A stretch of DNA of 64,000 nt from Heteronotia binoei (Eukaryota): contig NC_083227.1 of NCBI RefSeq assembly GCF_032191835.1, positions 37,324,001 to 37,388,000 on the forward strand. Reading direction: 5' to 3'. A model generated the notes under the pieces. That model made no database searches. It was not told the DNA's origin and saw only the letters and a list, made by a program, of their open reading frames with translations. Positions 1-64,000 of this stretch are shown one piece after another. Numbering within the stretch: the first letter of the stretch is position 1; every line of letters begins with the position of its first letter. The translations under genes and the position numbers were made by a program.

Positions 1-720
1 GACTATCTTAAAAATCATCTAAGAACCCATACAGGGGAGAAGCTTTTTGAATGCTCCGAGTGTGGGAAGAGATTTGGTCGCAGTGGTACTCTTCAGAATC
101 ATCTAAAAACCCACACAGGGGAGAAGCCTTTTGAATGCTCCGAGTGTGGGAAAAGATTCAGTCAGCGCAGCCATCTTCAAAATCATCTAAGAACCCATAC
201 AGGGGAGAAGCCTTTTGAATGCTCCGAGTGTGGGAAGAGATTTGGTCGCAGTGGTAGTCTTCAAAATCATCTAAAAACCCACACAGGTGAAAAGCCTTTT
301 GAATGCTCTGAGTGTGGGAAGGGATTCAGTCAGAGCAGCCATCTTCAAAATCATCTAAGAACCCATACAGGAGAGAAGCTTTTTGAATGCTCCGAGTGTG
401 GGAAGAGATTTGGTCGGAGTGGTACTCTTCAGAATCATCTAAAAACCCACACAAGTAAAAAGCCTTTTGAATGCTCCAAATGTGGGAAGGGATTCTGTCA
501 GAGCAGCCATCTTCAAAATCATCTAAGAACCTACTCAGGGGAGAAGCCTCTTGAATGCTCCAAGAGTTCAAATAGATTCACTCAGAGTGACACTCTTCAA
601 AATCCTCTGAGAACCCAAACAGGGGAGAATGCTTTTGAACACTCAGATGTAAAGAGCGATTCCATCAGTGTGGCAATCTTCAAAAGTGTTGAAGAATCTA
701 CACAAATGGAAAGCAGGTAA
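1..720 (+). CDS. 3' part of the terminal C2H2 zinc-finger exon of ZNF-B' (recent duplicate of ZNF-B), open at the window start
   Basis: Frame 1 is open from base 1 to TAA at 718-720. It encodes tandem [10 protein letters not shown]...HLxTHTGEKP fingers followed by a degenerate-finger tail (..EESTQMESR*). The ORF track misses it because there is no upstream ATG. Nearly identical to 53803..54522. Confidence 0.9.
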
Positions 721-1540
721 CTGCTTAGCCCAAAGTTGTGGAACTCTCTTTTTCTGCTGGGACATGTGTGCCATAAAATGTTATGCTAGGTACTGAAGAT
801 AATAAATTTCAGAAAAGACACAGGCAAACCCTGTTAACAATGTAATTTTTTACTCAAAATGGGGCAAACCCAGTTAACACTATAATTTTTTACTCAAAAT
901 GCAAACATGCTTAAAACATTATTTCTGTAATTTAACTGTCATTGATAACTGACCTCTCTTGCTCTGAATTATTGCTTCAAAATCTGGATTCAGTGTCTGA
1001 GCTGCAGCTGAGAAAGTACTTTTGATTTATGGGCATTTATTAAAGAAAAGAGCTGTTCTCACACTGTCCAAAACATAGACAGAATTTTAGAAGCGGAAGC
1101 CTTAAGCATGCTTATGTATTCTATCACCCCTCAGCATCATCGGTCATTGCAGAAGAAATGCAGGGGAAGCAGCGCCAAGGCTTTCATGCCTCCCTTGTGA
1201 ATAAGGAGGGGAGAAAGATTGGTGTGTTCATCCGAAAAGCCTACTCCTCTTCGGCCTTGAACTGGGGATTGCAAACTATCCACCATCAGGGAAGGCGTAT
1301 CAGATCTTGCAGTAGGAGAAACTGGTACTTACCTGGACTTTCTTCCAGAAGACAAGAAACCCCTGGTCAGACTGGTGCAGGCAGAAGCCATCTGCCTGTC
1401 CAAGCAACGGATCAGTATGGGTAAGCACTCCGCTGAGAGCGGCTAAGGTGATGGCATTGGCCCTGGTGTTGGGCATCATGTTTGGCTCTGTTCTACCGCC
1501 ATTCTGCCTGAAATGAGACAGAGGGTGGGAGACTTAGATT

Positions 1541-1821
1541 AAGAAGAAGAAGATATTGGATTTATATCCCGCCCTCCACTCCAAATTTCAGAGTTTCAGA
1601 GCGGCTCACAATCTCCTTTACCTTCCTCCCCACAACAGATACTCTGGGAGGTGGGTGGGGCTGAGAGGGCTCTCACAGCAGCTGGCCTTTCAAGGACAAC
1701 CTCTGCCAGAGCTATGGCTGCCATGGCCATTCCAGCAGGTGCAAGTGGAGGAGTGGAGAATCAAACCCAGTTCTCCCAGATAAGAGTCCGCACACTTAAC
1801 TACTACACCAAACTGGCTCTC
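1541..1821 (-). mobile_element. tRNA-derived SINE, Squam3-like, inserted in DIRS ORF1
   Basis: On the - strand it begins GAGAGCCAGTTTGGTGTAGT with A/B-box-like motifs and has an L2-like 3' end with a (TTC)n tail. It matches copies at 38021, 46467, 50544 and 55337. Confidence 0.85.
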
Positions 1822-2653
1822 ACTTACCTCTTGAGGGGGCTACTGTTTGCCATCAACACCAACAAGGTGCTGTCCCAGATCAAAAAAGACAAGCAAATGG
1901 TGAGATCCTTTGGTATCCCCCAGGGATCCCCTGCCCCTTACAAGGCTTGCCACACCTATGGGCCTCATGGCTATCAGATGCCCTACTTCCACCACCCGTA
2001 CCAGCAGAAGGCAGTTCAGTATAATCCTCAGTGCCCCTTCCAAGGGCACATGGGCCAAGACAGATATAGGGCTGCGCACGGCAGGGACCTTCCCCACAAC
2101 AGCCCCAGGTCAAGGACTAGTGATAGCAGAGCTTGAAAGGGTCTTTCAGACTACCACCCGTGGCAGACCCCACACCCAACTTTTGCCTGGACAGGCTGAA
2201 ACCTTTTGTACAGACCTGGGGCTGGGTCTTGGTCATAGTGCAAAAGGGGGTACAAGCTAGAGCTTTGGCAAAGGGCCCCTCAACATCTGGATGGATCACT
2301 TGATAATTCCCTCCAGAGCTTCAACAGGAGGTAACCTCTCTGTTAGGCATGGGTGCACTTCAAAGAGACTCAAAAGTGTGATCTTGTCACAGTTTCTTTT
2401 CTCATATCCCCCCTCATCCTTGAGAAAGATGGGTTTCTGACCAATTTTAGATTTAAGGGGTGTTAACTTTATCCTCAAGGTTACAACATTCAAAAAGTTA
2501 GCAATATCTTCTGTTTTTAAAATGTTGGAATTAAACTTTTGGTATTGCATGCTAAATCTCTAAGATGCTTATTTTCATATGGCAATGCACCCAAGTTTAA
2601 GCACAGTATAGTTCCCTAGCAATACACCGTGCTCCTGTTTTGGTGGTCTACAG

Positions 2654-3238
2654 CAGGGGTCCCCAACCTCTGGGCCACAGACCAGTACTGGCTGTGGCCT
2701 GTTAGCAATGAGGCTGCGAGACAGAGGCGCCACACTGCCCCTTTTGCCTGCCTGGGAGCCGGGCGTGGCCTTCAAGGCTAACTCCCCTTGCAGGGGAGGC
2801 AGCCTCAGAGCAAGGCAGAGCAGCCCCACTGCCCCGTCCGCCCCATTGGGATCCAGGCAGACAAAAGAGGCTGTGCGGCCTCACTCCAAAGCTGCTTCTC
2901 CTTGCAGGGGAGGCAGCCTTGGAGTAAATCCACACCTCCTTTTGTCCACCTGGGTCTGGGCCAGGGGAAGAGGCAGCACTGCTGTGACCTTCCTACCCCT
3001 CATTTATAGACACCTGCTGATCAGTGGGGGTCTTTAGATGGGAAGGGGAGGTAGATTGGCTTCTGCTGCCTGGCTCCCCCCCTCCTTTAAAGAGGGTGCA
3101 GGCAGGGGTGCAGGCAGGGGGATAGCCTGGGCAGCAAAACCCCCAGCACCACCTCCTTCCCCCGCCCCCCCCCAGTCCATGGAAAAACTGCCTTCCACAA
3201 AACCAGTCCTTGGTGACAAAAAAGGTTGTGTGCCACTG
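2654..3238 (+). mobile_element. MER1-like non-autonomous hAT (Charlie-type) element inserted in DIRS RT
   Basis: Ends CAGGGGTCCCCAACC...GGTTGTGTGCCACTG with MER1-like subterminal sequence (TGGAAAAA..CTTCCACAAAACCAGTCC). Imperfect 8-bp flanks GTCTACAG/ATCCAAAG. The RT frame resumes after it. Confidence 0.8.
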
Positions 3239-4614
3239 ATCCAAAGCACCGAGGGTTTTTTAAAAGTGCCTAGCTGTAGTGGTAGCACACCTTAGAATTG
3301 AAAGGTATGTTATGTCCCCATATCAAGATGACTGGTCACAGAACAGTCCAAGGAGGCACTGGAGAGGCAAGTGGAGCCTGTGTTTACGTGCCAGAATCTG
3401 GGTTTGGTAGTCAGAAATCACAGCTTCAGCTTGTACATTAGGTTCAGTTCATTGGAGCCATTCTTGATTCATCCAGGGCAAAAGTGTCCCTATAAAAAAT
3501 GCATCTTCTATTAGAGCATATGCTTCCAATTGGCCTTATTCCTTCAAAAATTCCTAGGGCTCATGGCATCCACCACAGCTGCAAACAACCTGCAGCAATG
3601 GTTCCTGTATAGGTTCCTCCTGGCCAGGCACTCGCAACATGTCAAATTGTCAAACTGCTGGGAAGCAGCCCATATCTGGCAGTTCACTGCTTGTCAAGAA
3701 TTCTTATAGGCATTCAATGTCATAAGCGCAAACACCAGGGTGGATATATTGATTGGGACTTGGCTACTTAGGTCTCCCTGGAGGAGACCTGTATTTGTCT
3801 GGTGTTTGAAGATTAGGAGTTTCCAGAGATGAGTTTATTTGCCACAAAGCACGGTACCAAGGCCTTGAATTTTTGTTCCAGGGTGCGGGCAGATCCCCTC
3901 TCATTGGGGGGATGCCTTTCAGATCAGGTGGACTGTCACTATCTTCCATGCCTTTTCCCCTCTCCCACTTTTGCCCAGATTGCTGACCAAGGTCAGGGAC
4001 AAAGGAACTGACTGCATTCTGATAGTCCCCTTCTGGTCAAGGCAGGCATGGTTCCAGTTGTTGGACCTGGAGAGCCACTATGTCTGCCTCCTTCAGGTAG
4101 AGGACCTACGACATGATGTCCCACTTCTTCATAAAGTGGGCAGTTTGCAACTGATGGTGTGGCTCCTCAATAGCCCCAGTTCAGATTCTTGGAAGATTGT
4201 ATATTTTGCTGGATATGCATATATTAAGGGTGTCTTTACTCACACAGAGGAATTGGTTTTATTGGAAAAGACAATTTTTTCAGCAGGAGATGTTACAGTC
4301 CAGCATGCTGAATTGCTGGTGGTTCTGGAAGTGGTGAAAGCTGCCCCTTCAGGCTCCCTTGTGCCAGTCTATGCAGATAGGCAGTATATCTGGTTTTCTT
4401 TCTGATCTTAACAATTTGGAAGCAATATTGCTTCCGTATTTCCAGGGGCAATCCAATGAAAGCCAAATGGATCTGGTTGGTAATGATGAGCTGGCCTCAA
4501 CAAGAGGAAGCAACTTTATTCTGTAAAAGCACATCAAACTCGAGTTCTTCATGTCCCTGGGAATTCTGCTGCCAATACAGCTACGAAGGAAGCAAGACAG
4601 CAATCTGTTGTAGG

Positions 4615-4807
4615 CAGGGCTTTTTGTGTGGGAAAAATCCCAGCAGGAACTCATTTGCATATTAGGCCACGCCCCTGATGTCACCATTGTTTCGGGGCTT
4701 TTTGTCGAAAAAGCCCAGCAGGAACTCATTTGCATATTAGGCCACACACCCTGACACCAAGCCAGCCAGAACTGCGTTCCTGTGCATTCCTGCTCAAAAA
4801 AGCCCTG
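4615..4807 (+). mobile_element. hAT MITE carrying duplicated ATTTGCAT (octamer) motifs
   Basis: TIRs CAGGGCTTTTT/AAAAAGCCCTG and a perfect 8-bp TSD GTTGTAGG (4607-4614, 4808-4815). Internal tandem repeat AAAGCCCAGCAGGAACTCATTTGCATATTAGGCCAC. Confidence 0.9.
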
Positions 4808-4913
4808 GTTGTAGGTGTGGCGAACAGGTAAACTGCCTTTTTGAATGATATTTTACAGGCATGCTTAGTCCTCAGCAAGCCAAACCCCAAAAATGACCCC
4901 CAAAGTTATAAAT

Positions 4914-4982
4914 ATTGTCAGTCTTTAAGGTGCTGTTTGACTTTTGTTTTATTTTGCTACAACAGACTAACGCAGTATCCCT
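4914..4982 (+). mobile_element. Penelope-like terminal remnant
   Basis: GTCTTTAAGGTGCT...TTTTGCTACAACAGACTAAC resembles reptile Penelope-derived ends, from recall only. Confidence 0.45.
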
Positions 4983-5369
4983 TTTCAACCAAATAGTTCA
5001 ACAAAGTGGCCAGCCAGTTGCCTTGAGACATGTTTATGTGGAACATTAGTAGGTGGCCATTCACACATCTGTCTCTGACTAATGGGACCTGACCCTTTAT
5101 GTACTCAGACTGCAAACTGGTGCAGTATTTTCCTGTAAATTAGGCCATGCTTTTAAAAGGGTTAACTTTTATTCACTAAGAAGTAGCTGACAGAAGGCAC
5201 AACAGAAAGGAAATCTGAATGGTAACGGGCAATCAAAACATCTGCCAAATCAAAACCCTTCAGTTATTGGTAGGTTTAGTTCAACAGTTACTAAAATGTT
5301 TGGGATTAAGATGCCCAATTATGTTTCCCACATGGTTAGTGCACTAGAGAATTTGGTGGATGTGTTAAT

Positions 5370-6114
5370 GGCCTTTTTCACACAGTCTATGTATTCCGGT
5401 ATGGAAGCTGGTCAGTTACTGAACAGTAACGGGTTTCTGCTGGCATTTCAGACAGACCCGATTCAGTAACTGGCTGCTACCGGAATACTCTCACCTTTTC
5501 ACACACTCCTGCGGCTGTCCCGGTAGTGAGGCGTGCCTGAGTCGTTACAAAGAGCAGCTTCTTCCACTTTTCAACCCCTCCTTCCGGGTTGAAATCGCTA
5601 TGGGGTGCTGTGTGAAATGTCCAGTATCTAACCCGGGAGCAGTTTTCGCGCCCTTTTCGCCCGCCGGCGCATGCGATCTCCGGCTTTTTTTTTTTTTTGG
5701 AACGTCGGGCTAAGATCGCTATAGTGACGTATCACAACAGCATCACCATAGGGATGCCTGGGCTCCATTAAGATGCCAGATATCGCCACCGCTGAAACCT
5801 GGTAACTTATCTCAATAGAGCCTAGCCATCTCTATGGTGTTGCTGTTGTGATACGTCACTATAGCGCTATAGCGATCTTAGCCCGATGTTCAAAAAAAAA
5901 TAATAAGCTGGAGATCGCGAGCCGGCAGGCAAAAACAGCTGGCGCTGGTGGAAGCGAGATAAGAGCGGAACAGTGTGAAATGGCTCGCTTCAATCACGGA
6001 ACCCTACCGGAAAAAAAAACATGTGTCTGAAAACTCCCATCCCTGTCTCGGATTACTGCAAGCGGCACAATACCGACTCCCTTCCGGTTTCCACTGGTAA
6101 GTGTGAAAAGGGCC
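5370..6114. mobile_element. CpG-rich palindromic MITE, PIF/Harbinger-like
   Basis: TIRs GGCCTTTTTCACAC / GTGTGAAAAGGGCC with a 3-bp AAT duplication on both sides, plus a long central inverted repeat (about 5690-5900). Confidence 0.7.
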
Positions 6115-7742
6115 AATGTCTCTGAAGAGAATGAGAGAAGGAAGTAGGGTGATGCCAGCCTCCTACTGGGATCTGCAAATTACCAGAAGTTACACCTCAT
6201 TTCCAGACTACAGAAATCAGTTCCTGTGGAGAAGATGGATGTTTGGAGGGCGGACTCTATGGCATTGTACTCCATTGATAGATGCTCCAGAGCAGTAACC
6301 ATGAGCTGTGGCAGAGCAATGGGGCGAAAGATTGTGGAGATGAAGCTAACTGTAACCTGAGATGGTGCTGATTAACTCAAAAACAAGGACTGGATATTTG
6401 CTTACAGATGTGCGGGGACTTAGATTAGCTTTTGCCTTTATAATTTCTCCAGAATGAGTCTGCATTGCTCTCTTGGATGGGTCAGACACTTAGCTTAAGC
6501 AAATCTCTTTATGTCTCCTGTCATATTTGTCCTAGCCATCCCTAACGCTGACCATTTCTTGTGGCTGGAATCAGGATTGGTTGCTTTTAGGATGAGCCTT
6601 GCAAAAGGACACCCAGAAACCTTGTTTCAAAAAATCTGGAAGTGGGGGGGGGGGGGAGGGAGGAGAATGCAGGCTCTCCAGGCAGGCTTCCCTTTGCTGT
6701 CGGAGCTTGGGGGTACTATCAGGTTCATTGCTTCACTGAGGCTGGGAGGCTTGGGAGCTTGTATTTTGAGCTATGTGCTCACTCGTGGGTGGCTAAGTAC
6801 AATCGGGAAGAGTTGGGACTTGCCTGCCTAGTGCGGCATTTGGAGCAATAAATTTCCCCTGCTCCTTTAAACAGGTTCCCTAGCTTCCTCTCCCCCCCCC
6901 CCACCACCACCTCGGCTCCTCCCTTCCCAACTCAGTTTCACTTCGGCACTTACTCCTCCCAGACTCAGCTTTTCCTCCTCCTTCCTCAGCTTCCTTCCAC
7001 TTGGTCTCCCAAACAAACTTTTCTTCTTCTCTCCCAACTGCACTGTAAGTTGTAATTTTTTTTCTGAGTGTAAAGGTGGGCGTGGGGGAGAGGTTTGGAC
7101 CTGGACAAAACAGGGCTCCAGCAACAGGATTTCAGGGCCAGTTTTTAATTTAAAAATAAAATAAAATAAAGGGCACAGAAGAGGATTTTCCAGGAGGAAA
7201 GATTTGCACAGTGGAGGGGTGGATAATAGAAAGAAGCAGAAAAGCAAGGAGCTAAAAAACCAAGAACAGAAGCCTTTCTGCAGCATATCCTGGAAAGATG
7301 CCAGCCTCCAAGTGGGAGCTGGGGTTCCCCTAAAATTACAGGTCATCTCCAACCTACAAAGATCAGAAGTGGACAAGAGCTATTCTGTGCTAATCTCCAG
7401 GGGAACTGAAAGGATAAGGTATTTCTCTGTTTTAGAACCAGTTTGCTATGTACAGTCATGCAACATATCAGAGCCATGCATTGTTACAAATGTTTAAAAA
7501 CAGCCTATTGTGAAGAATATTTTCCAGCTATGCAAATATGTCAGGGTTTGGTCCTTGATGGCCCACAAGCCTGTTTAAAAGGTGGATATGAGACATATGC
7601 AAAGAAATAGTTTTTCATCTTGGATTTGGCTGACAGAGGTGCTAAGAGATTTCTTTATGCCAGTTATGGAATTGCTTTGGGACTGTTGTTGCTGTGAATC
7701 TAGTTGTGCCTTCCTTCTTTGGCAGCCTGTAATAATTCCTAG

Positions 7743-17325: not shown

Positions 17326-17463
17326 GTAGGGGGGATTAATGGGGTATAGTCGGGCCCCCCACCTTTCTCATGAAAGCTTTTGGTCCTGCTGACGGTGGAG
17401 AGAGAGGTTCTGAACCAAACTCTACATCCTGCACCCTCCCAGAATCCCCCGTTGGGAGTGTAG

Positions 17464-47063: not shown

Positions 47064-47324
<261 letters not shown>

Positions 47325-50543: not shown

Positions 50544-50817
50544 GAGAGCCAGTTTGGTGTAGTGGTTAAGTGTGCGGACTCTTATCTGGGAGAACTGGGT
50601 TTGTTTCTCCACTCCTCCACTTGCACCTGCTGGCATGGCCTTGGGTCAGCCATAGCTCTGGCAGAGGTTGTCCTTGAAAGGGCAGCTGCTGTGAGAGCTT
50701 TCTCCAGCCCCACCCACCTCACAGGGTGTCTGTTGTGGGGGAGGAAGGTAAAGGAGATTGTGAGCCCCTCTGAGACTCTTTGGAGTGGAGGGCGGGATAT
50801 AAATCCAATATCTTCTT
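50544..50817 (+). mobile_element. Squam3-like tRNA SINE
   Basis: Same family as 46467..46740. Confidence 0.85.
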
Positions 50818-52062: not shown

Positions 52063-52179
52063 CAGATGTACAAGAGACAGCTGAGGAATTCCAGGGGTTC
52101 TCTTTGGAAAAACCCAATAATGAAGATGCCGAAGGACACTATGGAGATGAATCACAGAGGCAGGAGGGAAGCTATACAG
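52063..52179 (+). CDS. ZNF-B probable 117-nt cassette exon (phase 1-1)
   Basis: CTTTATTCCAGCAG|CAGAT...TATACAG|GTAAGA; open [39 protein letters not shown]. Confidence 0.6.
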
Positions 52180-52384
52180 GTAAGAGGAGTCATACAGTTG
52201 GGGAAGGCATATAAACATCTCTCATGGAGGAGGCTTAAATGTACTTTTAAAGTGTACATTATTGTAGCCTTCAGTGTACAGCAGGAAGAAACCACTGAAA
52301 TATTTAGAGTTCAGATACAAATTCAGGTGCAGATCAGATCCCTTTGTGTGGGCTGTAATGGGATCTCTTTCTTTATTCCAGCAG

Positions 52385-54336
52385 GTGACAATCAGAGGAA
52401 TGAGGAGGATGAGGAACAGCATCCTCAATTGCCAGAGGAAGTGAAGAATGAAAACTTGGGAGGAAACTTCAGCAATCAAGTTCGGCCTAAGAGGGAGGAA
52501 AGAAGCCAGGTTGTCAAGAAGATGAGTAAAGCCATTCCTTGCCAAGGGGGGCATTTCCAAGAAGTCTTTCCCATGGTGAAGAAAACATACAAGTCCTTGG
52601 TGTGTGGAATGAACTTCCCAGATCAATCACAGTTAAAGGTCGATTTACAAATGCAGAGTGGAAAGAAAACCCAACAATGGCCGGAGTCTGGAAAGAGCAT
52701 GATTCACAGAGCAGAACTCCTTAGATGGGAAAAAACACATTCAGGAGAGAAACCTTATAGCTGCTCAGAGTGTGGCAAGAGATTCTCAGAGAAATCAGGC
52801 CTTGTTCAACACCAAAGGATTTGCTCAGGACAGAAGCTAGTTATTAGGTCTGAGATAGGAATGGCATTCTCCGAAGGAGGAAAAGGTAATGTACATTTTC
52901 CAAAACACAGTATAGTGAATGCAAATAAATTCTTTTGGTGCAGAAAGTACTTCAGATACAGATCACAACTCCTTGTGCACAAAAAAATCCACAGAGGGGA
53001 GAAGCCTTTTGAATGCTCAGAGTGTGGGAAGAGATTCAGTCGGAGTGGCACTCTTCTACAGCATCTAAGAACCCACAAAAGGGAGAAGCCTTTTGAATGC
53101 TCAATGTGTGAGAAAAGATTCAGTTGCAATGGCAGTCTTCAAAAGCATCTAAAAATCCACACTAGAGAGAAACCTTTTGACTGCTCTGCGTGTGGGAAGA
53201 GATTTAATGAGAGTGGCACTCTTCAGCAGCATCTAAGAACACACACAGTGAAGAAGCCTTTTGAATGCTTACAGTGTGGGAAGAGATTCACTCAGAGTGG
53301 CATTCTTCAGCAGCATCTAAGAATCCACACAGGAGAGAAGCCTTTTGAATGCTCATTGTGTGGGAAGAAATTCCGTTGGAGTGATGGTCTTCAAAAACAT
53401 CTAAGAACTCTCACAGGGCAGAAGCCTTTTGAATGCTCAGTGTGTGGGAAAAGATTCACTCGGAGTGGCACTCTTCAAGAGCATCTAAGAAACCATGCTG
53501 GGGAGAAGCCTCTTGAATGCTCAGTGTGTGGGAAGAGATTCAGTCGCAATAGCGATCTTCAAAAACATCTAAGAACCCACACAGGGGAGAAACCCTTTGA
53601 ATGTTTAGAGTGTGGGAAGAAATTCAGTCGCAGTGGCAATCTTCAAGAGCATCTAAGAACACACACAGGGGAGACGCCTTTTCAATGCTCAGAGTGTGGG
53701 AAGAGATTCAGTCGCAGTTGCACTCTTCATAAACATTTAAGAACTCACACAGGGGACAAGCCTTTTAAATGCTCTGAGTGTGGAAAGGGATTCAGTCAGA
53801 GTGACTATCTTAAAAATCATCTAAGAACCCATACAAGGGAGAAGCTTTTTGAATGCTCCGAGTGTGGGAAGAGATTTGGTCGCAGTGGTACTCTTCAGAA
53901 TCATCTAAAAACCCACACAGGGGAGAAGCCTTTTGAATGCTCCGAGTGTGGGAAAAGATTCAGTCAGCGCAGCCATCTTCAAAATCATCTAAGAACCCAT
54001 ACAGGGGAGAAGCCTTTTGAATGCTCTGAGTGTGGGAAGAGATTTGGTCGCAGTGGTAGTCTTCAAAATCATCTAAAAACCCACACAGGTGAAAAGCCTT
54101 TTGAATGCTCTGAGTGTGGGAAGGGATTCAGTCAGAGCAGCCATCTTCAAAATCATCTAAGAACCCATACAGGAGAGAAGCTTTTTGAATGCTCCGAGTG
54201 TGGGAAGAGATTTGGTCAGAGTGGTACTCTTCAGAATCATGTAAAAACCCACACAAGTAAAAAGCCTTTTGAATGCTCCAAATGTGGGAAGGGATTCTGT
54301 CAGAGCAGCCATCCTCAAAATCATCTAAGAACCTAA
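52385..54336 (+). CDS. ZNF-B terminal exon: 14 canonical C2H2 fingers plus degenerate or truncated fingers; protein 895 aa (934 with the cassette exon)
   Basis: TTCCAGCAG|GTGAC acceptor in phase with KRAB-A; long TGEKP-linked array; TAA at 54334-54336. Confidence 0.93.
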
Positions 54337-54919
54337 TCAGGGGAGAAGCCTTTTGAATGCTCCAAGAGTTCAAATAGATTCACTCAGAGTGACACTCTTC
54401 AAAATCCTCTGAGAACCCAAACAGGGGAGAATGCTTTTGAACACTCAGATGTAAAGAGCGATTCCATCAGTGTGGCAATCGTCAAAAGTGTTGAAGAAGC
54501 TACACAAATGGAAAGCAGGTAACTGCTTAGCCCAAAGTTGTGGAACTCTCTTTTTCTGCTGGGACATGTGTGCCATAAAATGTTATGCTAGGTACTGGAG
54601 ATAATAAATTTCAGAAAAGACACAGGCAAACCCTGTTAACAATGTAATTTTTTACTCAAAATGCAGCAAACCCAGTTAACACTATAATTTTTTACTCAAA
54701 ATGCAAACATGCTTAAAACATTATTTCCGTAATTTAACTGTCATTGATAACTGACCTCTCTTGCTCTGAATTATTGCTTCAAAATCTGGAGTCAGTGTCT
54801 GAGCTGCAGCTGAGAAAGTACTTTTGATTTATGGGCATTTATTAAAGAAAATAGCTGTTCTCACACTGTCCAAAACATAGACAGAATTTTAGAAGCGAAA
54901 GCCTTAAGCATGCTTACGT

Positions 54920-57900
54920 ATTCTATCACCCCTCGGCATCATCGGCCCTTGCAGAAGAAATGCAGGGGAAGCAGCGCCTTCATGCCTCCCTTGTGAATAA
55001 GGAGGGGAGAAAGATTGGTATGTTCATCCGAAAAGCCTACTCCTCTTCGACCTTGAACTGGAGATTGCAAACTATCCACCATCAGGGAAGGCGTATCAGC
55101 TCTTGCAGTGGGAGAAACTGGTACTTACCTGGACTTTCTTCCAGAAGACAAGAAACCCCTGGTCAGACTGGTGCAGGCAGAAGCCACCTGCCTGTCCAAG
55201 CAACAGATCAGTATGGGTAAGCACTCCGCTGAGAGCTGCCAAGATGATGGCATTGGCCCTGGTGTTGGGCATCATGTTTGGCTCTGTTCTACCGCCATTC
55301 TGCCTGAAATGAGACAGAGGGTGGGAGACTTAGATTAAGAAGAAGAAGATATTGGATTTATATCCCGCCCTCCACTCCAAATTTCAGAGTTTCAGAGCGG
55401 CTCACAATCTCCTTTACCTTCCTCCCCACAACAGATACCCTGGGAGGTGGGTGGGGCTGAGAGGGCTCTCACAGCAGCTGGCCTTTTAAGGACAACCTCT
55501 GCCAGAGCTATGGCTGCCATGGCCATTCCAGCAGGTGCAAGTGGAGGAGTGGAGAATCAAACCCAGTTCTCCCAGATAAGAGTCCGCACATTTAACCACT
55601 ACACCAAACTGGCTCTCACTTACCTCTTGAGGGGGCTACTCTGTTTGCCATCAACACCAACAAGGTGCTGTCCCAGATCAAAAAAGACAAGCAAATGTTG
55701 AGATCCTTTGGTATCCCCCAGGGATCCCCTGCCCCTTACAAGGCTTGCCACACCTATGGGCCTCATGGCTATCAGATGCCCTACTTCCACCACCCATACC
55801 AGCAGAAGGCAGCTCAGTATAATCCTGTGCCCCTTCCAAGGGCACATGGGCCAAGACAGATATAGGGCTGCGCACAGCAGGGACCTTCCCCACAACAGCC
55901 CCAGGTCAAGGACTAGTAATAGCAGGGCTTGAAAGGGTCTTTCGGACTACCACCCGTGGCAGACCCCACACCCAACTTTTGCCTGGGCAGGCTGAAACCT
56001 TTTGTACAGACCTGGGGCTGGGTCTTGGTCATAGTGCAAGAGGGGGTACAAGCTAGAGCTTTGGCAAAGGGCCCCCTAACATCTGGATGGATCACTTGAT
56101 AATTCCCTCCCAGAGCTTCAACAGGAGGTAACCTCTCTGTTAGGCATGGGTGCACTTCAGAGAGACTCAAAAGTGTGATCTTGTCACAGTTTCTTTTCTC
56201 ATATCCCCCCTCATCCTTAAGAAAGATGGGTTTCTGACCAATTTTAGATTTAAGGGGTGTTAATTTTATTCTCAAGGTTACAACATTCAAAAAGTTAGCA
56301 ATATCTTCTGTTTTTAAAATGTTGGAATTAAACTTTTGGTATTGCATGCTAAATCTCTTAAGATGCTTATTTTCATATGGCAATGCACCCAAGTTTAAGC
56401 ACAGTACAGTTCCCTAGCAATACACCGCGCTCCTGTTTTGGTGATCTACAGCAGGGGTCCCCAACCTCTGGTCCAGTACTGGCTGTGGCCTGTTAGCAAT
56501 GAGGCTGCGAGACAGAGGCGCCACACTGCCCCTTTTGCCTGCCTGGGAGCCGGGCTTGGCCTTCAAGGCTAACTCCCCTTGCAGGGGAGGCAGCCTCAGA
56601 GCGAGGCAGAGCAGCCCCACTGCCCCGTCCGCACCGTTGGGATCCAGGCAGACAAAAGGGGCTGTACGGCCTCACTCCGAAGCTGCTTCCCCTTGCAGGG
56701 GAGGCAGCCTTGGAGTAAATCCACACCTCCTTTTGTCCACCTGGGTCTTGGCCAGTGGAAGAGGCAGCACTGCTGTGACCTTCCTACCCCTCATTTATAG
56801 ACACCTGCTGATCAGTGGAGGTCTTTATATGGGAAGGGGAGGTAGATTGGCTTCTTCTGCTGCCTGGCTGCCCCCCTCCTTTAAAGACCCCCATAGGGGG
56901 TAGAGAGAGGGTGCAGGCAGGGGGACAGCCTGGGCAGCAAAAACCCCAGCACCACCTCCTCCCCCCCCCCCCCCCCCGTCCATGGAAAAATTGCCTTCCA
57001 CAAAACCAGTCCCTGGTGACAAAAAAGGTTGTGTGCCACTGATCCAAAGCACCGAGGGTTTTTTAAAAGTGCCTAGCTGTAGTGGTAGCACACCTTAGAA
57101 TTGAAAGGTATGCTATGTCCCCATATCAAGATGACTGGTCACAGAACAGTCCAAGGAGGCACTGGAGAGGCAAGTGGAGCCTGTGTTGTTCACGTGCCAG
57201 AATCTGGGTTTGGTAGTCAGAAATCACAGCTTTAGCTTGTACATTAGGTTCAGTTCATTGGAGCCATTCTTGATTCATCCAGGGCAAAAGTGTACCTCCC
57301 TATAAAAAATGCATCTTCTATCAGAACATATGCTTCCAATTGGCCGTATTCCTTCAAAAACTCCTAGGGCTCATGGCATCCACCACAGCTGCAAACACCC
57401 TGCAGCAAGGGTTCCTGTATAGGTTCCTCCTGGCCAGGCACTAGCAACATGTCAAATTGTCAAACTGTGCCGGGAAGCAGCCCACATCTGGCAGTTCACT
57501 GCTTGTCAAGAATTCTTATAGGCATTCAATGTCATAAGCTCAAACACCAGGATGGATATATTGAGTGGGACTTGGCTACTTAGGTCTCCATGGAGGAGAC
57601 CTGTATTTGTCTGGTGTTTGAAGATTAGGAGTTTCCAGAGATGGGTTTATTTGCCACAAAGCACAGTACCAATTTTTTGTTCCAGGGTGCGGGCAGATCC
57701 CCTCTCATTGGGGGTATGCCTTTCAGATCAGGTGGACCATCACTATCTTCCATGCCTTTTCCCCTCTCCCACTTTTGCCCAGATTGCTGACCAAGGTCAG
57801 GGACAAAGGAACTGACTGCATTCTGATAGTCCCCTTCTGGTCAAGGCAGGCATGGTTCCAGTTGTTGGACCTGCAGAGCCACTATGTCTGCCTCCTGCAG

Positions 57901-58680
57901 GTAGAGGACCTACGACATGATGTGCCACTTCTTCATGAAGTGGGCAGTTGGAAACTGATGGTGTGGCTCCTCAATAGCCCCAGTTCAGATTCTTGGAAGG
58001 TTGTATATTTTGCTGGATATGCATATATTAAGGGTGTCTTTACTCACACAGAGGAATTGGTTTTATTGGAAAAGATAATTTTTTCAGCAGGAGATGTTAC
58101 AGTCCAGCATGCTGAATTGCTGGTGGTTCTGGAAGTGGTGAAAGCTGCCCCTTCAGGCTCCCTTGTGCCAGTCTATGCAGATAGGCAGTATATCTGGTTT
58201 TCTTTCTGATCTTAACATTTTGGAAGCAATATTGCTTCCGTATTTCCAGGGGCAATCCAATGAAAGCCAAATGGATCTGGTTGGTAATGATGAGCTGGCC
58301 TCAACAAGAGGAAGCAACTTTATTCTGTAAAAGCACATCAAACTCGAGTTCTTCATGTCCCTGGGAATTCTGCTGCCAATACAACTATGAAGGAAGCAAG
58401 ACAGCAATCTGTCGTAGGCAGGGCTTTTTGTGTGGGAAAAATCCCAGCAGGAACTCATTTGCATATTAGGCCACACCCCTGATGTCACCATTGTTTCGGG
58501 GCTTTTTGTCGAAGAAGCCCAGCAGGAACTCATTTGCATATTAGGCCACACACCCTGGCACCAAGCCAGCCAGAACTGCGTTTCTGTGCATTCCTGCTCA
58601 AAAAAGCCCTGGTTGTAGGTGTGGTGAACAGGTAAACTGCCTTTTTGAATGATGTTTTACAGGCATGCTTAGTCCTCAGC
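54920..58680 (+). mobile_element. Duplicate of the decayed DIRS1-like element, with nested SINE (55337..55617), MER1-like hAT (56452..57041) and hAT MITE (58419..58611)
   Basis: Colinear with 1120..4870. Confidence 0.8.
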
Positions 58681-59177
58681 AAGCCAAACCCCAAAAATGA
58701 CCCCCAAAGTTATAAATATTGTCAGTCTTTAAGGTGCTGTTTGACTTTTGTTTTATTTTGCTACAACAGACTAACGCAGTATCCCTTTTCAACCAAATAG
58801 TTCAACAAAGTGGCCAGCCAGTTGCCTTGAGACATGTTTATGTGGAACATTAGTAGGTGGCCATTCACACATCTGTCTCTGACTAATGGGACCTGACCCT
58901 TTATGTACTCAGACTGCAAACTGGTGCAGTATTTTCCTGTAAATTAGGCCATGCTTTTAAAAGGGTTAACTTTTATTCACTAAGAAGTAGCTGACAGAAG
59001 GCACAACAGAAAGGAAATCTGAATGGTAACGGGCAATCAAAACATCTGCCAAATCAAAACCCTTCAGTTATTGGTAGGTTTAGTTCAACAGTTACTAAAA
59101 TGTTTGGGATTAAGATGCCCAATTATGTTTGTTTCCCACATGGTTAGTGCACTAGAGAATTTGGTGGATGTGTTAAT

Positions 59178-59927
59178 GGCCTTTTTCACACAGTCTATGT
59201 ATTCCGGTATGGAAGCTGGTCAGTTACTGAACAGTAACGGGTTTCTGCTGGCATTTCAGACAGACCCGATTCAGTAACTGGCTGCTACCAGAATACTCTC
59301 ACCTTTTCACACACTCCCGCGGCTGTCCCGGTAGTGAGGCGTGCCTGAGTCGTTACAAAGAGCAGCTTCTTCCACTTTTCAACCCCTCCTTCCGGGTTGA
59401 AATCGCTATGGGGTGCTGTGTGAAATGTCCAGTATCTAACCCGGGAGCAGTTTTCGCGCCCTTTTTCGCCCGCCGGCGCACGCGATCTCCGGCTTTTTTT
59501 TTTTTGGAACGTCGGGCTAAGATCGCTATAGCGCTATAGTGACGTATCACAACAGCATCACCATAGGGATGCCTGGGCTCCATTAAGATGCCAGATATCG
59601 CCACCGCTGAAACCTGGTAACATCTCAATAGAGCCTAGCCATCTCTATGGTGTTGCTGTTGTGATACGTCACTATAGCGCTATAGCGATCTTAGCCCGAC
59701 GTTCCAAAAAAAATAATAAGCTGGAGATCGCGAGCCGGCAGGCAAAAACAGCTGGCACTGGTGGAAGCGAGATAAGAGCGGAACAGTGTGAAATGGCTCG
59801 CTTCAATCACGGAACCCTACCGGAAAAAAAAACATGTGTCTGAAAACTCCCATCCCTGTCTCGGATTACTGCAAGCGGCACAATACCGACTCCCTTCCGG
59901 TTTCCACTGGTAAGTGTGAAAAGGGCC
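59178..59927. mobile_element. Duplicate of the Harbinger-like palindromic MITE
   Basis: Same TIRs and AAT flanks; central arms 59506..59570 and 59641..59705. Confidence 0.7.
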
Positions 59928-60844
59928 AATGTCTCTGAAGAGAATGAGAGAAGGAAGTAGGGTGATGCCAGCCTCCTACTGGGATCTGCAAATTACCAGA
60001 AGTTACACCTCATTTCCAGACTACAGAAATCAGTTCCTGTGGAGAAGATGGATGTTTGGAGGGCGGACTCTATGGCATTGTACTCCATTGATAGATGCTC
60101 CAGAGCAGTAACCATGAGCTGTGGCAGAGCAATGGGGCGAAAGATTGTGGAGATGAAGCTAACTGTAACCTGAGATGGTGCTGATTAACTCAAAAACAAG
60201 GACTGGATATTTGCTTACAGATGTGCGGGGACTTAGATTAGCTTTTGCCTTTATAATTTCTCCAGAATGAGTCTGCATTGCTCTCTTGGATGGGTCAGAC
60301 ACTTAGCTTAAGCAAATCTCTTTATGTCTCCTGTCATATTTGTCCTAGCCATCCCTAACGCTGACCATTTCTTGTGGCTGGAATCAGGATTGGTTGCTTT
60401 TAGGATGAGCCTTACAAAAGGACACCCAGAAACCTTGTTTCACATTTTGACGAATGTTGTTAATAATTTCCTCTGAGTTTGCTCAAGCTACGCCCCCTTG
60501 GCCTTTTGGAATCTCTTCTCTAGATATGAAAGGGAGGTGGGGGCTTTTGATCGGCTCCCCTTTTCTGTTTACTGGGGTAAACAGAAGCCCCCTAGACCAC
60601 TATAGGGGAACTGGTGTAACAAGATGCCTGGAGGCCTAAAGAACAGGGCATAGAGGCCAAGGTTTTCTCCTCTGTTTCTTCCTAGGACTGGTACTCAGAG
60701 GGGGTGTTATATAGGAAAATACCACAAAAGCATAAGAGTACACACAGGCCATTCCCAGCCATCTTCTATGCATATAAAGGTTCCTCTCCCTTAAATTGAT
60801 TTGAAATGATGGGACTCCCTGCTGGTACCCTTGAGTCCTGCCCT

Positions 60845-62638
60845 ACAACTGATGGATAAATTAAAAACTAATAAGTCACCAGGTCCAAATGGTATACATC
60901 CAAGGGTTCTGAATCTCCTGCCAAAAATATGTAATCTTTAATTGAAATCTCCCTCCGTTCCTGAGGACTGGAAGGTATCAAATGTCACCCCCATCTTTAA
61001 AAAGGGTTTCATAGGAGATCCAGGAAACTACAGGCCAGTCAGTCTGACTTCAATACCGGGAAAGTTGGTAGAAACCATTATCAAGGACAGAATGAGTAGG
61101 CACATTAATGAACACAATTTATTGAGGAAGAGTCAGCATGGGTTCTGTAAGGGAAGATCTTGCCTCACTAACCTGTTACATTTCTTTGAGGGGGTGAACA
61201 AACATGTGGACAAAAGAGACCCAATAGATGTTGTTTACCTTGACTTCCAGAAAGCTTTTGATAAAGTTCCTCATCAAAGGCTCCTTAGTAAGCTCGAGAG
61301 TCATGGAGTAAAAGGACAGGACCTCTTGTGGATCCAAAACTGGCTAATAGGAAGCAGAGAGTGAGTATGAATGGGCAGTCTTTGCAGTGGAGGACGTTAA
61401 GCAGTGGGGTGCCGCAGGGCTCAGTACTGGGTCCCATGCTCTTTAACTTGTTCATTAATGATTTGGAGTTGGGAGTAAGCAGTGAAGTGGCTAAGTTTGT
61501 GGATGACACTAAATTGTTCAGGGTGGTGAGAACCAGAGAGGATTGTGAGGAACTCCAAAGGGATCTGTTGAGGATGGGTGAGTGGCAGATGAGGGCGTCA
61601 ACGTGGCAGATGAGGTTCAATGAGGCCAAGTGCAAAGTAATGCACATTGTGGGCAAAAATCCCAGCTACAAATACAAGTTGATGGGGTATTAACTGGCAG
61701 AGACTGACCAAGAGAGAGATCTTGGGGTCATTAATATTAATTTATTATTATTTTTAATTAATTTTATTTCTATCCCGCCCTCCCCGCCGGAGCAGGCTCA
61801 GGGCGGCTCACAACATAAAATACAAATTACATCCATTATATTTATAAAAACATGGTTAAAAAATAATATATATATATATTTTTTGGTCATGGTAGACAAC
61901 TCACAAAAATGTCAAGACAGTGTGCGGTTGCAATAAAAAAGGCCAACGGGAATTACTAGGAAGGGAACTGAAAACAAATCAGCCAGTATCATAATGCCCC
62001 TGTATAAATCAATGGTGTGGTCTCATTTGGAATATTGTGTACAACTCTGGTCACCGCACCTCAAAAAAGATATTATAGCATTGGAAAAAGTCCAGAAAAG
62101 GGCAACTAGAATGATTAAAGGTTTGGAACACTTTCCCTATGAAGAAAGGTTAAAACGCTTGGGTCTCTTTAGCTTTGAGAAACGTCGACTGCGGGGTGAC
62201 ATGATAGAATTTTACAAGATTATGCATGGGATGGAGAAAGTAGAGAAAGAAGTACTTTTCTTCCTTTCTCACAGTACAAGAACTCGTGGGCATTCAATGA
62301 AATTGCTGAGCAGCCGGGTTAGAATGGATAAAAGGAAGTACTTCTTCACCCAAAGGGTGATTGACATGTGGAATTCACTGCCACAGGAGGTGGTGATGGA
62401 TAAAAATATGGAGCAGAGGTCTATCTGTGGCTATTAGCCACAGTGTATTATTGGAACTGTCTGGGGCAGTGATGCTCTGTATTCTTGGTGCTTGGGGTGG
62501 GGGGCAAAATGGAAGGGCTTCTAGACCCACTTGTGAACCTTCTGATGACACTTGGGGTTTTTTTTGGCCACTATGTGACACAGAGTGTTGGACTGGATGG
62601 GTCATTGGCCTGATCCAACATGGTTTCTCTTATGTTCT
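60845..62638 (+). mobile_element. 5'-truncated CR1 LINE with a nested L2-type tail (about 61727..61880, - strand)
   Basis: KSPGPNGIHPRVL, GDPGNYRPVSLTS, VYLDFQKAFDKVPH, GVPQGSVLGP, KFVDDTKL and EERLKRLGLFSFEKRRLRGD; same 3' UTR as 25700..27284. Confidence 0.92.
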
Positions 62639-62644
62639 CTTTTA

Positions 62645-62695
62645 GAAAGCCAGTTTGGTGTAGTGGTTAAGCGTGCGGACTCTTATCTGGGAGAA
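62645..62695 (+). mobile_element. Isolated tRNA-like head of a Squam3-like SINE
   Basis: GAAAGCCAGTTTGGTGTAGTGGTTAAGCGTGCGGACTCTTATCTGGGAGAA, then unrelated sequence. Confidence 0.7.
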
Positions 62696-64000
62696 GGTAC
62701 AAAAAGGATTCTGATCAGACCCACTTTGGATTGCTCTGCGTGAGCTGGCTTCAGTTTGCTTTCCCTTTTCCTACTCTAATCAGCCTCTCACCCTACCACG
62801 ATTTTCTGAGATGGCTGAACAGTGTGGGATTCTCCAGGAGCGCAATCCTGCTTGGATTTACTCCAGAGCAATCCCACTGAGGAGCACCAGGGACCTCTGA
62901 CATAGGCTTTCCAACCCCCCCGCCCTGGCGGGGGACCCCCTGATTAGCAGCCTCATCCCCTGCTCTCAAAAAATCTGGAAGTGGGGGGGGGGGGAGGGAG
63001 GAGAATGCAGGCTCTCCAGGCAGGCTTCCCTTTGCTGTCGGAGCTTGGGGGTACTATCAGGTTCGTTGCTTCACTGAGGCTGGGAGGCTTGGGAGCTTTT
63101 ATTTTGAGCTATGTGCTCACTCGTGGGTGGCTAAGTACAATCGGGAAGAGTTGGGACTTGCCTGCCTAGTGCGGCATTTGGAGCAATAAATTTCCCCTGC
63201 TCCTTTAAACAGGTTCCCTAGCTTCCTCTCCCCCCCCCACCACCTCGGCTCCTCCCTTCCCAACTCAGTTTCACTTCGGCACTTGCTCCTCCCAGACTCA
63301 GCTTTTCCTCCTCCTTCCTCAGCTTCCTTCCACTTGGTCTCCCAAACAAACTTTTCTTCTTCTCTCCCAACTGCACTGTAAGTTGTAATTTTTTTTCTGA
63401 GTGTAAAGGTGGGCGTGGGGGAGAGGTTTGGACCTGGACAAAACAGGGCTCCAGCAACAGGATTTCAGGGCCAGTTTTTAATTTAAAAATAAAATAAAAT
63501 AAAGGGCACAGAAGAGGATTTTCCAGGAGGAAAGACTTGCACAGTGGAGGGGTGGATAATAGAAAGAAGCAGAAAAGCAAGGAGCTAAAAAACCAAGAAC
63601 AGAAGCCTTTCTGCAGCATATCCTGGAAAGATGCCAGCCTCCAAGTGGGAGCTGGGGTTCCCCTAAAATTACAGGTCATCTCCAACCTACAAAGATCAGA
63701 AGTGGACAAGAGCTATTCTGTGCTAATCTCCAGGGGAACTGAAAGGATAAGGTATTTCTCTGTTTTAGAACCAGTTTGCTATGTACAGTCATGCAACATA
63801 TCAGAGCCGTGCATTGTTACAAATGTTTAAAAACAGCCTATTGTGAAGAATATTTTCCAGCTATGCAAATATGTCAGGGTTTGGTCCTTGATGGCCCACA
63901 AGCCTGTTTAAAAGGTGGATATGAGACATATGCAAAGAAATAATTTTTCATCTTGGATTTGGCTGACAGAGGTGCTAAGAGATTTCTTTATGCCAGTTAT

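What the first reader, a model, noticed from the sequence alone, without database searches (positions are those of the whole stretch)
1..64000. A roughly 54-kb repeating cassette that would co-amplify two SCAN-KRAB-ZNF genes and an NK-type lectin
Seen: 1..7667 recurs at 53803..64000 (offset 53,802) with scattered substitutions and indels, so a near-identical ZNF-B copy precedes the window. Inference: if the whole interval is the repeat unit, then [ZNF-A, antisense lectin, ZNF-B] is being amplified as one module, coupling KRAB-ZNF repressors and an innate-immune receptor in a single copy-number-variable block. Only about 7.7 kb of overlap is visible, so the unit size and lectin copy number are unproven.
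Basis: partly seen in the sequence, partly recalled or inferred. Interest (0 to 1): 0.72.

Follow-up and report, generated by a model that had tools for sequence, protein, structure and literature searches.

The report
Gecko 54-kb ZNF-lectin tandem duplication
About 54 kb of a Bynoe's gecko chromosome, carrying two SCAN-KRAB zinc-finger genes and one NK-receptor-like lectin gene, is very probably present twice in a row; this is the ordinary way such gene clusters grow, not a special coupling of the genes.

Summary
Window 1-7667 recurs at 53803-64000 with 1.7% substitutions and 21 indels, one of them a 2,526-bp LINE fragment found only in copy 2. Both copies are cut by the window ends.

I tested the unit size through annotated proteins instead.

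The window is the Heteronotia binoei RefSeq chromosome of 173 Mb:
- ZNF-A is XP_060094725, encoded exactly by the window.
- The lectin is XP_060094726, also encoded exactly.

Both have near-identical twins encoded elsewhere on the same chromosome:
- XP_060094727 is a ZNF-A twin, about 336 of 350 residues identical.
- XP_060094728 is a lectin twin, with 130 of 130 CTLD residues identical and 2 of 19 first-exon residues different.

The accession order A, lectin, A', lectin' is what a tandem repeat running past the right edge predicts. So the whole cassette (ZNF-B, ZNF-A, lectin) is duplicated, with two copies detected.

Not shown: more than two copies, copy-number variation, or any functional coupling. 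The lectin models have no membrane anchor. An assembly artefact (two haplotypes kept in tandem) is not excluded.

This is a real but ordinary lineage-specific segmental duplication.

The parts
1..7667 (+). Copy 1 of the young duplication, cut by the window start: the tail of ZNF-B' plus about 7 kb of 3' flank.
   Evidence: 98.3% identical in aligned columns to 53803-64000.
1..720 (+). ZNF-B' terminal-exon tail. It is 239 open codons with six good C2H2 fingers and degenerate ones after them; the stop codon is 718-720. It keeps TAC (Tyr) where ZNF-B has TAA.
   Evidence: codon-by-codon comparison; Pfam zf-C2H2, zf-H2C2_2.
12850..25709 (+). ZNF-A, a SCAN-KRAB-C2H2 gene, = XP_060094725.1 (P0077). 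Exons: SCAN from 12850, 15114-15230, 17251-17325, KRAB-A 17509-17646, 19222-19338, finger exon 24411-25709. The RefSeq model also removes a GT-AG intron at 24869-25003.
   Evidence: 386/386 residues identical in the finger exon. (Pfam SCAN, KRAB, zf-C2H2). (accession). plus reading of the splice sites.
25833..27285 (-). Older LINE fragment that cuts off the end of the ZNF-A finger array. A relic finger (27285-27372) and the old 3' flank (27479-27790) lie beyond it.
   Evidence: 86% inverted match to 60918-62446; RVT_1; finger and flank homology to ZNF-B resumes after the insert.
34183..44733 (-). KLRF1-like lectin gene = XP_060094726.1 (P0272, 189 aa). Coding exons: 44733-44662; 43199-43092 (antisense to the ZNF-B SCAN exon); CTLD exons about 37874-37720, 36110-35999 and about 34303-34183; stop TAA at 34182-34180.
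   Evidence: 100% identity, with canonical GT/AG at every junction; best solved relative is KLRF1 8qmd, E 2.3e-30. Lectin_C, E 9e-18.
39515..39571 (-). Alternative proximal first exon of the lectin (ATG plus GT donor). The twin lectin' (XP_060094728.1) uses its own copy of this exon, which differs at 2 of 19 residues. This shows that lectin' is encoded at another locus.
42966..54336 (+). ZNF-B, a SCAN-KRAB-C2H2 gene whose exons are all open; it was not found among annotated proteins. Exons: SCAN 42966-43391, 44785-44904, 46195-46269, KRAB-A 47127-47264, 52059-52175, finger exon about 52381-54336.
   Evidence: alignment to P0001 and P0004; Pfam SCAN, KRAB, 17 finger pairs; no protein close to 100% identity in the collection.
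54334..54336 (+). TAA stop specific to ZNF-B (TAC in ZNF-B'). It removes the last 61 codons, which are degenerate fingers and the tail.
53803..64000 (+). Copy 2 of the young duplication, cut by the window end.
60441..62966 (+). 5'-truncated LINE fragment inserted only in copy 2, after the duplication (empty site in copy 1 at 6626/6627).
   Evidence: junctions; RVT_1 in 60942-61364 and 61328-61693.
4851..7667 (.). Low-divergence tract of the duplication: 0.46% here against 2.4% in 1-4850. It is a probable later gene-conversion or exchange tract between the copies.
   Evidence: change point near 4850; 117/4827 against 13/2807; Fisher p 5e-12.
40962..40998.

Best explanation
A single, fairly recent tandem segmental duplication copied a block of about 54 kb in the SCAN-KRAB zinc-finger cluster of a 173-Mb Heteronotia binoei chromosome.

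The layout that fits the data best is ZNF-B' - ZNF-A - lectin | ZNF-B - ZNF-A' - lectin'. The window covers the stretch from the tail of ZNF-B' to 7 kb past ZNF-B. ZNF-A' and lectin' lie just beyond the right edge; ZNF-A' is expected to start about 5 kb past position 64000. The junction of the two units would lie between about 39.6 and 42.9 kb.

Since the duplication the copies have drifted:
- 1.7% substitutions overall (2.4% in the older stratum).
- Small indels and one LINE insertion.
- A nonsense codon in ZNF-B.
- About 4% amino-acid change between ZNF-A and ZNF-A'.

Part of the block has been homogenised again (0.46% tract). The lectin was carried along because it sits between the zinc-finger genes, not because of any shown functional link.

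Shown: the overlap, the gene models, and the existence of twins on the same chromosome. Inferred: that the twins are adjacent, that there are exactly two units, where the junction lies, and that this is a real duplication rather than an assembly artefact.
For: - The two ends of the window match over 7.6 kb right up to both window edges.
- The window encodes XP_060094725 (ZNF-A) and XP_060094726 (lectin) exactly, with canonical splice sites. This identifies the genome and its annotation.
- XP_060094728 has a CTLD identical to the window's (130/130) but differs at 2 of 19 residues in its first exon. The window holds only one such exon, so this protein is encoded by a second, near-identical locus on the same 173,159,557-bp record.
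- XP_060094727 matches the ZNF-A exons at about 336/350 residues, with mismatches inside exons, on the same record.
- This divergence fits the 1.25% nucleotide and 3.3% amino-acid divergence seen directly between ZNF-B' and ZNF-B.
- Accessions 725, 726, 727, 728 alternate ZNF-A, lectin, ZNF-A', lectin'. Accessions 725 and 726 are neighbours in that order in the window, as a tandem repeat to the right predicts.
- There is no N anywhere in the 64 kb, so the unit junction lies inside continuous sequence.
- No other squamate in the lectin search was seen to hold a near-identical pair, and most gave a single hit, so the pair looks lineage-specific.
Against: - No DNA outside the window was seen, so co-linearity of the two units is inferred from proteins and accession order. 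That RefSeq model accessions follow chromosomal order is my own knowledge plus the 725/726 case here; it is not a tested rule.
- ZNF-A' has an extra 42-residue exon that I could not find in ZNF-A, so the copies differ structurally.
- ZNF-B and ZNF-B' are absent from the protein collection, so annotation is an imperfect counter of copies. A third unit could exist unannotated.
- No read depth was obtained, so a haplotype artefact is not excluded.
Confidence: 0.76

Rival explanations
1. Assembly artefact. The animal has one cassette, and the assembler kept its two haplotypes one after the other, so every gene in the block was annotated twice.
For: Twin annotated genes would look the same under this model. 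The uneven divergence (0 to 3.6% per 500 bp) and a polymorphic LINE insertion are also what divergent haplotypes can show. H. binoei is a genetically diverse species complex (my own knowledge). No depth data could be obtained.
Against: - There is no gap (N) in the 64 kb, although the junction must lie within it. Retained haplotigs are usually separate contigs joined across gaps.
- 2.4% divergence over 5 kb plus 21 indels is high for alleles.
- The RefSeq lectin model XP_060094726 splices from exons inside ZNF-B across the inferred junction to the CTLD exons. The near-identical twin uses a different first exon. This suggests transcript support for the new adjacency, though I could not check that.
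Confidence: 0.12
2. Several separate duplications rather than one cassette. The ZNF-B tail and flank, ZNF-A and the lectin were each copied independently, or a copy of the block lies elsewhere on the chromosome (dispersed, not tandem).
For: Only proteins, not DNA, link the twins to the window. ZNF-A' differs from ZNF-A by an extra exon. Divergence is uneven.
Against: - Three independent events of similar age hitting three adjacent genes is unparsimonious.
- The visible copy 2 continues to the window edge exactly where ZNF-A' should follow.
- The accession order is A, L, A', L'.
Confidence: 0.05
3. One reading: a multi-copy, copy-number-variable array in which zinc-finger repressors and an immune lectin are amplified together because the combination is selected.
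For: The CTLD is identical in both copies (0/130 changes) although neutral drift at about 2% would give about 6 replacements. A ZNF-B' tail upstream leaves room for a further unit. ZNF-B-type genes escape annotation, so copies could be undercounted.
Against: - Only two lectins sit in the 90% cluster, and ZNF-A has one twin.
- lectin' uses a different first exon, as expected if no ZNF-B follows it.
- ZNF-B carries a new stop and a Leu-to-Pro change in a finger core. The ZNF-A pair changes at about the neutral rate.
- The lectin models have no membrane anchor.
- CTLD identity can also come from gene conversion, for which there is direct evidence in the flank.
Confidence: 0.07

Closest known systems
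Tandem and segmental in-situ duplications that expand KRAB and SCAN zinc-finger gene clusters (mammalian KZFP clusters; the independent SCAN-ZNF expansion in lizards)
   Same: The genes are clustered, same-strand SCAN-KRAB-C2H2 paralogues. An older ZNF-A/ZNF-B duplication (about 80% identity) is overlaid by a young one (98%). There are finger-array changes, premature stops and TE insertions after duplication. PMC5363842 states that KZFP genes were amplified through rounds of segmental duplication. PMC3971581 counts 240 SCAN-KRAB and 89 SCAN models in Anolis and concludes that reptiles expanded them independently.
   Different: The unit here carries two already-diverged ZNF paralogues plus an unrelated lectin gene on the opposite strand. 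The species is a gecko, for which I found no description of this block.
KLRF1 (NKp80), KLRF2 and KLRB1, the NK-receptor group of C-type lectin-like genes, which in mammals expand by tandem duplication in the NK gene complex
   Same: The CTLD is encoded by three exons, with conserved cysteines, a WIGL motif and no Ca-binding EPN/QPD motif. The best solved relatives are KLRF1 (8qmd, 2.3e-30), KLRF2 and KLRB1. A young tandem copy exists.
   Different: The annotated H. binoei, Gekko and Eublepharis models have no transmembrane or cytoplasmic part, whereas skink, lacertid, anole, varanid and sphaerodactylid relatives do. The gene is embedded in a zinc-finger cluster, and one model starts antisense inside a ZNF gene.
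False haplotypic duplications in long-read genome assemblies
   Same: Two about 98% identical copies sit next to each other, each annotated separately.
   Different: There is no gap at or near the junction; divergence and indel load are high for alleles; an annotated splice crosses the inferred junction. Depth was not tested.

Membership tests
Tandem segmental duplication (two adjacent co-linear copies of one block) | Two copies of high identity in direct orientation at a constant offset | tested here: met
   7.6 kb at 98.3%, direct orientation, offset 53,802 (56,339 after the LINE insert).
Tandem segmental duplication (two adjacent co-linear copies of one block) | Everything between the two visible copies is also duplicated | tested here: met
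   This was tested indirectly, through proteins. A ZNF-A twin (XP_060094727, about 96% aa) and a lectin twin (XP_060094728, CTLD 100%, exon 1 2/19 different) are encoded outside the window on the same chromosome. Intergenic DNA was not seen.
Tandem segmental duplication (two adjacent co-linear copies of one block) | The second unit directly abuts the first, with co-linear DNA | not testable with these tools
Only the accession order 725-728 and the match running to the window edge speak for it.
Tandem segmental duplication (two adjacent co-linear copies of one block) | Doubled read depth in the sequenced individual (that is, not two haplotypes) | not tested
SCAN-KRAB-C2H2 zinc-finger genes | SCAN domain, KRAB-A box and a tandem C2H2 array, in that order, in one gene | tested here: met
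   ZNF-A: SCAN 8.5e-35, KRAB 2.5e-22, about 10 fingers. ZNF-B: SCAN 6.9e-36, KRAB 2.9e-21, about 17 finger pairs. The ZNF-A model equals XP_060094725.
NK-receptor-type (group V) C-type lectin-like receptors, KLRF1-like | A CTLD closest to KLRF, KLRB or NKG2D, with conserved cysteines and no Ca-binding motif | tested here: met
   KLRF1 2.3e-30; KLRF2 5.5e-28; KLRB1 1e-26; exon 1 alone: KLRF2 4.7e-10; Lectin_C; reading of the exons.
NK-receptor-type (group V) C-type lectin-like receptors, KLRF1-like | Type II membrane protein: cytoplasmic tail with a signalling motif, a transmembrane helix and a stalk | tested here: not met
   The best 19-residue Kyte-Doolittle mean is 1.15 (P0272) and 0.81 (P0122), against 2.2-3.0 in relatives that carry a helix. 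tblastn with the N-terminal parts of those relatives finds nothing in the window. Short divergent exons could be missed.
Copy-number-variable amplified array | More than two units, or different unit numbers between individuals | tested here: inconclusive
   Only two annotated copies each of the lectin and ZNF-A were found. ZNF-B-type genes are unannotated, so copies may be undercounted. There are no population data.

The most novel reading that the evidence does not exclude
The tandem duplication created a new gene structure at its junction. The window's lectin copy, now lying just downstream (in its own orientation) of the duplicated ZNF-B, took its first two coding exons (60 residues) from the antisense strand of ZNF-B: one from its first intron and one from the SCAN exon itself. 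The twin lectin' keeps a different, proximal first exon. The two young lectin copies would then already differ in promoter and N-terminus. The window's copy would also be tied to ZNF-B by sense-antisense overlap, which could explain why ZNF-B is not annotated as coding.
Probability: 0.2. Interest if true: 0.5.

Novelty: new member of a known kind. Interest (0 to 1): 0.3.

Why it matters
It is a clean, datable case of a multi-gene block duplicating in a reptile zinc-finger cluster, so three gene pairs of the same age can be compared:
- The ZNF-B pair shows a new stop codon and a finger-core change.
- The ZNF-A pair has changed at about the neutral rate.
- The lectin CTLD is unchanged.

That makes it a small natural experiment on what happens to hitch-hiking genes in ZNF expansions.

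It does not show a functional ZNF-lectin module, an amplifying array, or an immune receptor in the strict sense.

For annotation users: ZNF-B and ZNF-B' look intact but were not found among the annotated proteins. One lectin model also overlaps ZNF-B antisense.

Tried and rejected
- **Read depth and variants.** A corrected stretch beside them was stopped by the cap. The Rfam scan stopped at 40900. In local scripts the unmasked window file still served as a BLAST subject, and was masked from then on.
- **Earlier findings.** Look-ups by words and by sequence gave nothing on neighbouring windows.
- **A second lectin or lectin relic inside the window.** None was found, so the older ZNF-A/ZNF-B duplication (homology 11541-27790 against 42237-54906) did not carry a lectin that is still recognisable.
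- **'The window is a gecko other than H. binoei'.** This was my first reading, because the best ZNF-B hits were only 70-73% identical. I rejected it when P0077 and P0272 proved to be encoded exactly by the window.
- **'The gap in P0077 means a different assembly'.** Rejected: the 135-nt gap is a canonical GT-AG intron at 24869-25003.
- **A transmembrane or stalk exon for the lectin.** Not found.
- **Rfam on 1-40900.** Nothing.
- **Spliced models.** They were searched exon by exon by reference. I never joined exons myself; the full-length proteins I used are database entries returned by the tools.
Full report
**Observation**

The window has no N. A self-comparison shows 1-6629 = 53803-60442 (97.2% with gaps counted) and 6627-7667 = 62966-64000 (98.8%). 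A global alignment gives 130 substitutions in 7,634 aligned columns (1.70%; K2P 0.0173) and 21 indel events.

The largest indel is 2,526 bp, present only in copy 2 (60441-62966). Its ORFs match reverse transcriptase (RVT_1, E 1e-17 and 1e-12), and it has an 86% relative at 25833-27285. It is therefore a 5'-truncated LINE that inserted after the duplication (junctions). The match reaches position 1 and position 64000, so both ends of the duplication are hidden. The only refinement is that the offset grows from 53,802 to about 56,339 after the LINE.

**What lies in the window**

- **ZNF-A (+).** Pfam finds SCAN in 12805-13386, KRAB at 17509-17646 and a C2H2 array in 24366-25709.
- **ZNF-B (+).** Pfam finds SCAN in 42915-43472, KRAB at 47127-47264 and a longer array in 52384-54333. 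Alignment to gecko proteins gives the small exons.
- **Older paralogy.** ZNF-A and ZNF-B are older paralogues, about 80-85% identical in DNA from 11541/42237 to 27790/54906. No homology is detectable in the flanks beyond that.
- **ZNF-A array.** It is cut short by the older LINE at 25833-27285. A relic finger and the old 3' flank follow at 27285-27790.
- **Lectin (-).** Three exons (about 37874-37720, 36110-35999, about 34303-34183) encode an intact C-type lectin-like domain. It is the only one in the window.
- **Introns.** The introns of ZNF-A hold L1 pieces: ORF 15534-17018 is an ORF2 C-terminal part by its Cys-rich motif, and 21974-22660 is an endonuclease part.

**Whose genome this is**

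A word search with the ZNF-B exon gave Heteronotia binoei proteins at only 70-73% identity. However, P0077 from that list is identical to the ZNF-A finger exon at 386 of 386 residues. Its single gap is a canonical GT-AG intron at 24869-25003. P0077 is XP_060094725.1 on a record of 173,159,557 bp. ZNF-B itself, although all its exons are open, has no counterpart in the collection.

**Testing the unit size without the flanks**

No read evidence exists in this report, and I worked beside those places afterwards. I therefore asked whether the genes in the unseen middle of the proposed unit have near-identical twins in the same annotated genome.

*Lectin.* An exhaustive search with the 51-residue first CTLD exon returned P0122, identical over the exon. 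Its 90% cluster has two members on the same chromosome, both named KLRF1 and neither called an isoform: P0272 = XP_060094726.1 (189 aa) and P0122 = XP_060094728.1 (149 aa).
- P0272 is encoded exactly by the window, with canonical splice sites. Its first two exons lie at 44733-44662 and 43199-43092, which is antisense inside ZNF-B.
- P0122 has the same 130 CTLD residues. Its 19-residue first exon differs at two residues (both one-base, CpG-type changes) from the only matching place in the window, 39571-39515.
- P0122 is therefore encoded by a second, near-identical locus.

*ZNF-A.* A word search with the N-terminal 330 residues of P0077 found P0274 (389 aa, SCAN plus KRAB).
- It matches the ZNF-A exons at about 336 of 350 residues: SCAN 137/140, KRAB 43/43, linker 44/47.
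- The mismatches lie inside exons.
- It carries an extra 42-residue exon that ZNF-A lacks.
- P0274 is XP_060094727.1 on the same record.

The accessions thus run 725 ZNF-A, 726 lectin, 727 ZNF-A', 728 lectin'. The first two are neighbours in that order in the window. Model accessions of one RefSeq annotation run usually follow gene order. That is my own knowledge, supported here by this pair and by the isoform and paralogue runs. A tandem repeat continuing past 64000 predicts exactly this series, with ZNF-A' starting about 5 kb beyond the window.

The amino-acid divergence of the ZNF-A pair (about 4%) equals that seen directly between ZNF-B' and ZNF-B (8 of 239 codons, 1.25% of bases).

**Most likely history**

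One tandem duplication of a block ordered ZNF-B, ZNF-A, lectin gave ZNF-B' - ZNF-A - lectin | ZNF-B - ZNF-A' - lectin'. The other two ways of cutting the cycle would put a twin at a lower accession than 725. The junction would lie between the proximal lectin exon, which the twin also has (39.6 kb), and the start of ZNF-B (about 42.2-42.9 kb).

Only two copies are detected: the lectin 90% cluster has two members, ZNF-A has one twin, and most other squamates gave a single hit in the lectin search.

With a neutral rate of roughly 1e-9 per site per year (my own assumption), 2.4% divergence means an age of the order of 10 million years.

**After the duplication**

- **Uneven divergence.** It is 2.4% in 1-4850 and 0.46% in 4851-7667 (Fisher p 5e-12). 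This is best read as later gene conversion or exchange between the units.
- **ZNF-B.** It acquired TAC to TAA at 54334-54336, a Leu-to-Pro change at a finger core position and an Arg-to-Gln change at a -1 contact position. In total 8 of 9 coding differences are non-synonymous.
- **ZNF-A pair.** It changes at about the neutral rate.
- **Lectin CTLD.** It is unchanged. Neutral drift at 2% would give about six replacements. The cause is purifying selection or conversion, and I cannot tell which.

**The lectin**

Its closest solved relatives are KLRF1, KLRF2 and KLRB1, so 'NK-type' is right for the domain. Neither annotated model has a hydrophobic helix. Relatives in skinks, lacertids, anoles, varanids and sphaerodactylids have a tail, a helix and a stalk. 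The nearest ones (Gekko 88%, Eublepharis 79%) do not. No such exon is found in the window. Calling it an innate-immune receptor is therefore not justified yet.

In every squamate species where both were returned, the lectin lies on the same chromosome-scale record as SCAN-KRAB ZNF hits. In Gekko japonicus it lies on a scaffold of the same length (230,129 bp) as one holding a SCAN-ZNF. This is a coarse lead that the neighbourhood is old.

**Rivals**

- **Haplotype artefact.** It would also give twin annotations. Against it: no gap in 64 kb, high divergence and indel load, and an annotated splice that crosses the inferred junction. Without depth I leave it at about 0.12.
- **Independent or dispersed duplications.** These are unparsimonious (0.05).
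- **A multi-copy, selected ZNF-lectin module.** Nothing supports it beyond the unchanged CTLD (0.07).

**Comparison and verdict**

Growth of KRAB and SCAN zinc-finger clusters by local segmental duplication is well known (PMC5363842). The lizard SCAN-KRAB expansion is documented (PMC3971581: 240 SCAN-KRAB models in Anolis, expanded independently in reptiles). This block is a new, unremarkable member of that kind, with a hitch-hiking lectin.

The only twist worth a follow-up is that one lectin copy seems to have gained antisense-ZNF-B first exons at the duplication junction.

Interest is 0.3.

Noticed in passing
window 43092-43199 and 44662-44733 (minus strand): The RefSeq lectin model XP_060094726 takes its first 60 residues from two exons antisense to ZNF-B. 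One lies in ZNF-B's first intron and the other inside the SCAN-coding exon. All junctions are canonical. ZNF-B itself, though open in every exon, is not among the annotated proteins.
   Followed up: partly
window 34183-39571 (minus strand); proteins P0272, P0122, P0372, P0128: The KLRF1-like lectin of Heteronotia, Gekko and Eublepharis is annotated without a transmembrane helix. The first two also lack the stalk. More distant squamate relatives have a tail with a conserved CYFNFRPR motif, a helix and a stalk. The CTLD is nevertheless 88% conserved between Heteronotia and Gekko.
   Followed up: partly
window 25709-27790: The ZNF-A finger array is cut by a LINE fragment (25833-27285). The present stop codon lies just before the insert. 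One relic finger (27285-27372) and the old 3' flank lie behind it. The ZNF-A' model (XP_060094727) skips the array altogether, splicing from about 24555 to an exon equal to 27854-27900. The window's ZNF-A has the same splice signals.
   Followed up: partly
window 24869-25003: The RefSeq model of ZNF-A removes a 135-nt GT-AG intron from inside the finger exon. This takes out 45 residues, including a degenerate finger.
   Followed up: partly
ZNF-A' protein P0274 residues 246-287; window 48951-49010: ZNF-A' has an exon that is absent from ZNF-A. Its only weak likeness in the window lies in the ZNF-B intron (E 0.15). ZNF-A lacks about 2.6 kb here relative to ZNF-B (18689/48895 to 19036/51887). The cause may be a deletion in ZNF-A after the duplication or conversion of ZNF-A' by another paralogue.
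   Followed up: partly
window 19222-19338 and 52059-52175: The 117-nt exon noted by another first-stage finding is used in the RefSeq ZNF-A model. In ZNF-B it has a homologue about 200 bp upstream of the finger exon, in another frame.
   Followed up: partly
window 15534-17018 (minus strand) and 21974-22660 (minus strand): Long open L1 pieces lie in ZNF-A introns. One is a 494-codon ORF2 C-terminal part with the Cys-rich motif (no Pfam hit). The other is a 228-codon endonuclease part.
   Followed up: partly
window 1541-1821, 38034-38318, 46467-46741, 50544-50818, 55337-55617: Five copies of an about 280-bp element, 88-92% alike, in both orientations. It is probably a SINE.
   Followed up: no
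window 39589-40096 and 41413-41942: A direct repeat of about 0.5 kb at 91% identity lies inside the interval where the duplication junction is inferred. A 96% fragment of it is at 10523-10604. The proximal lectin exon begins 18 bp from one copy. I cannot say whether it played a part in the duplication.
   Followed up: no
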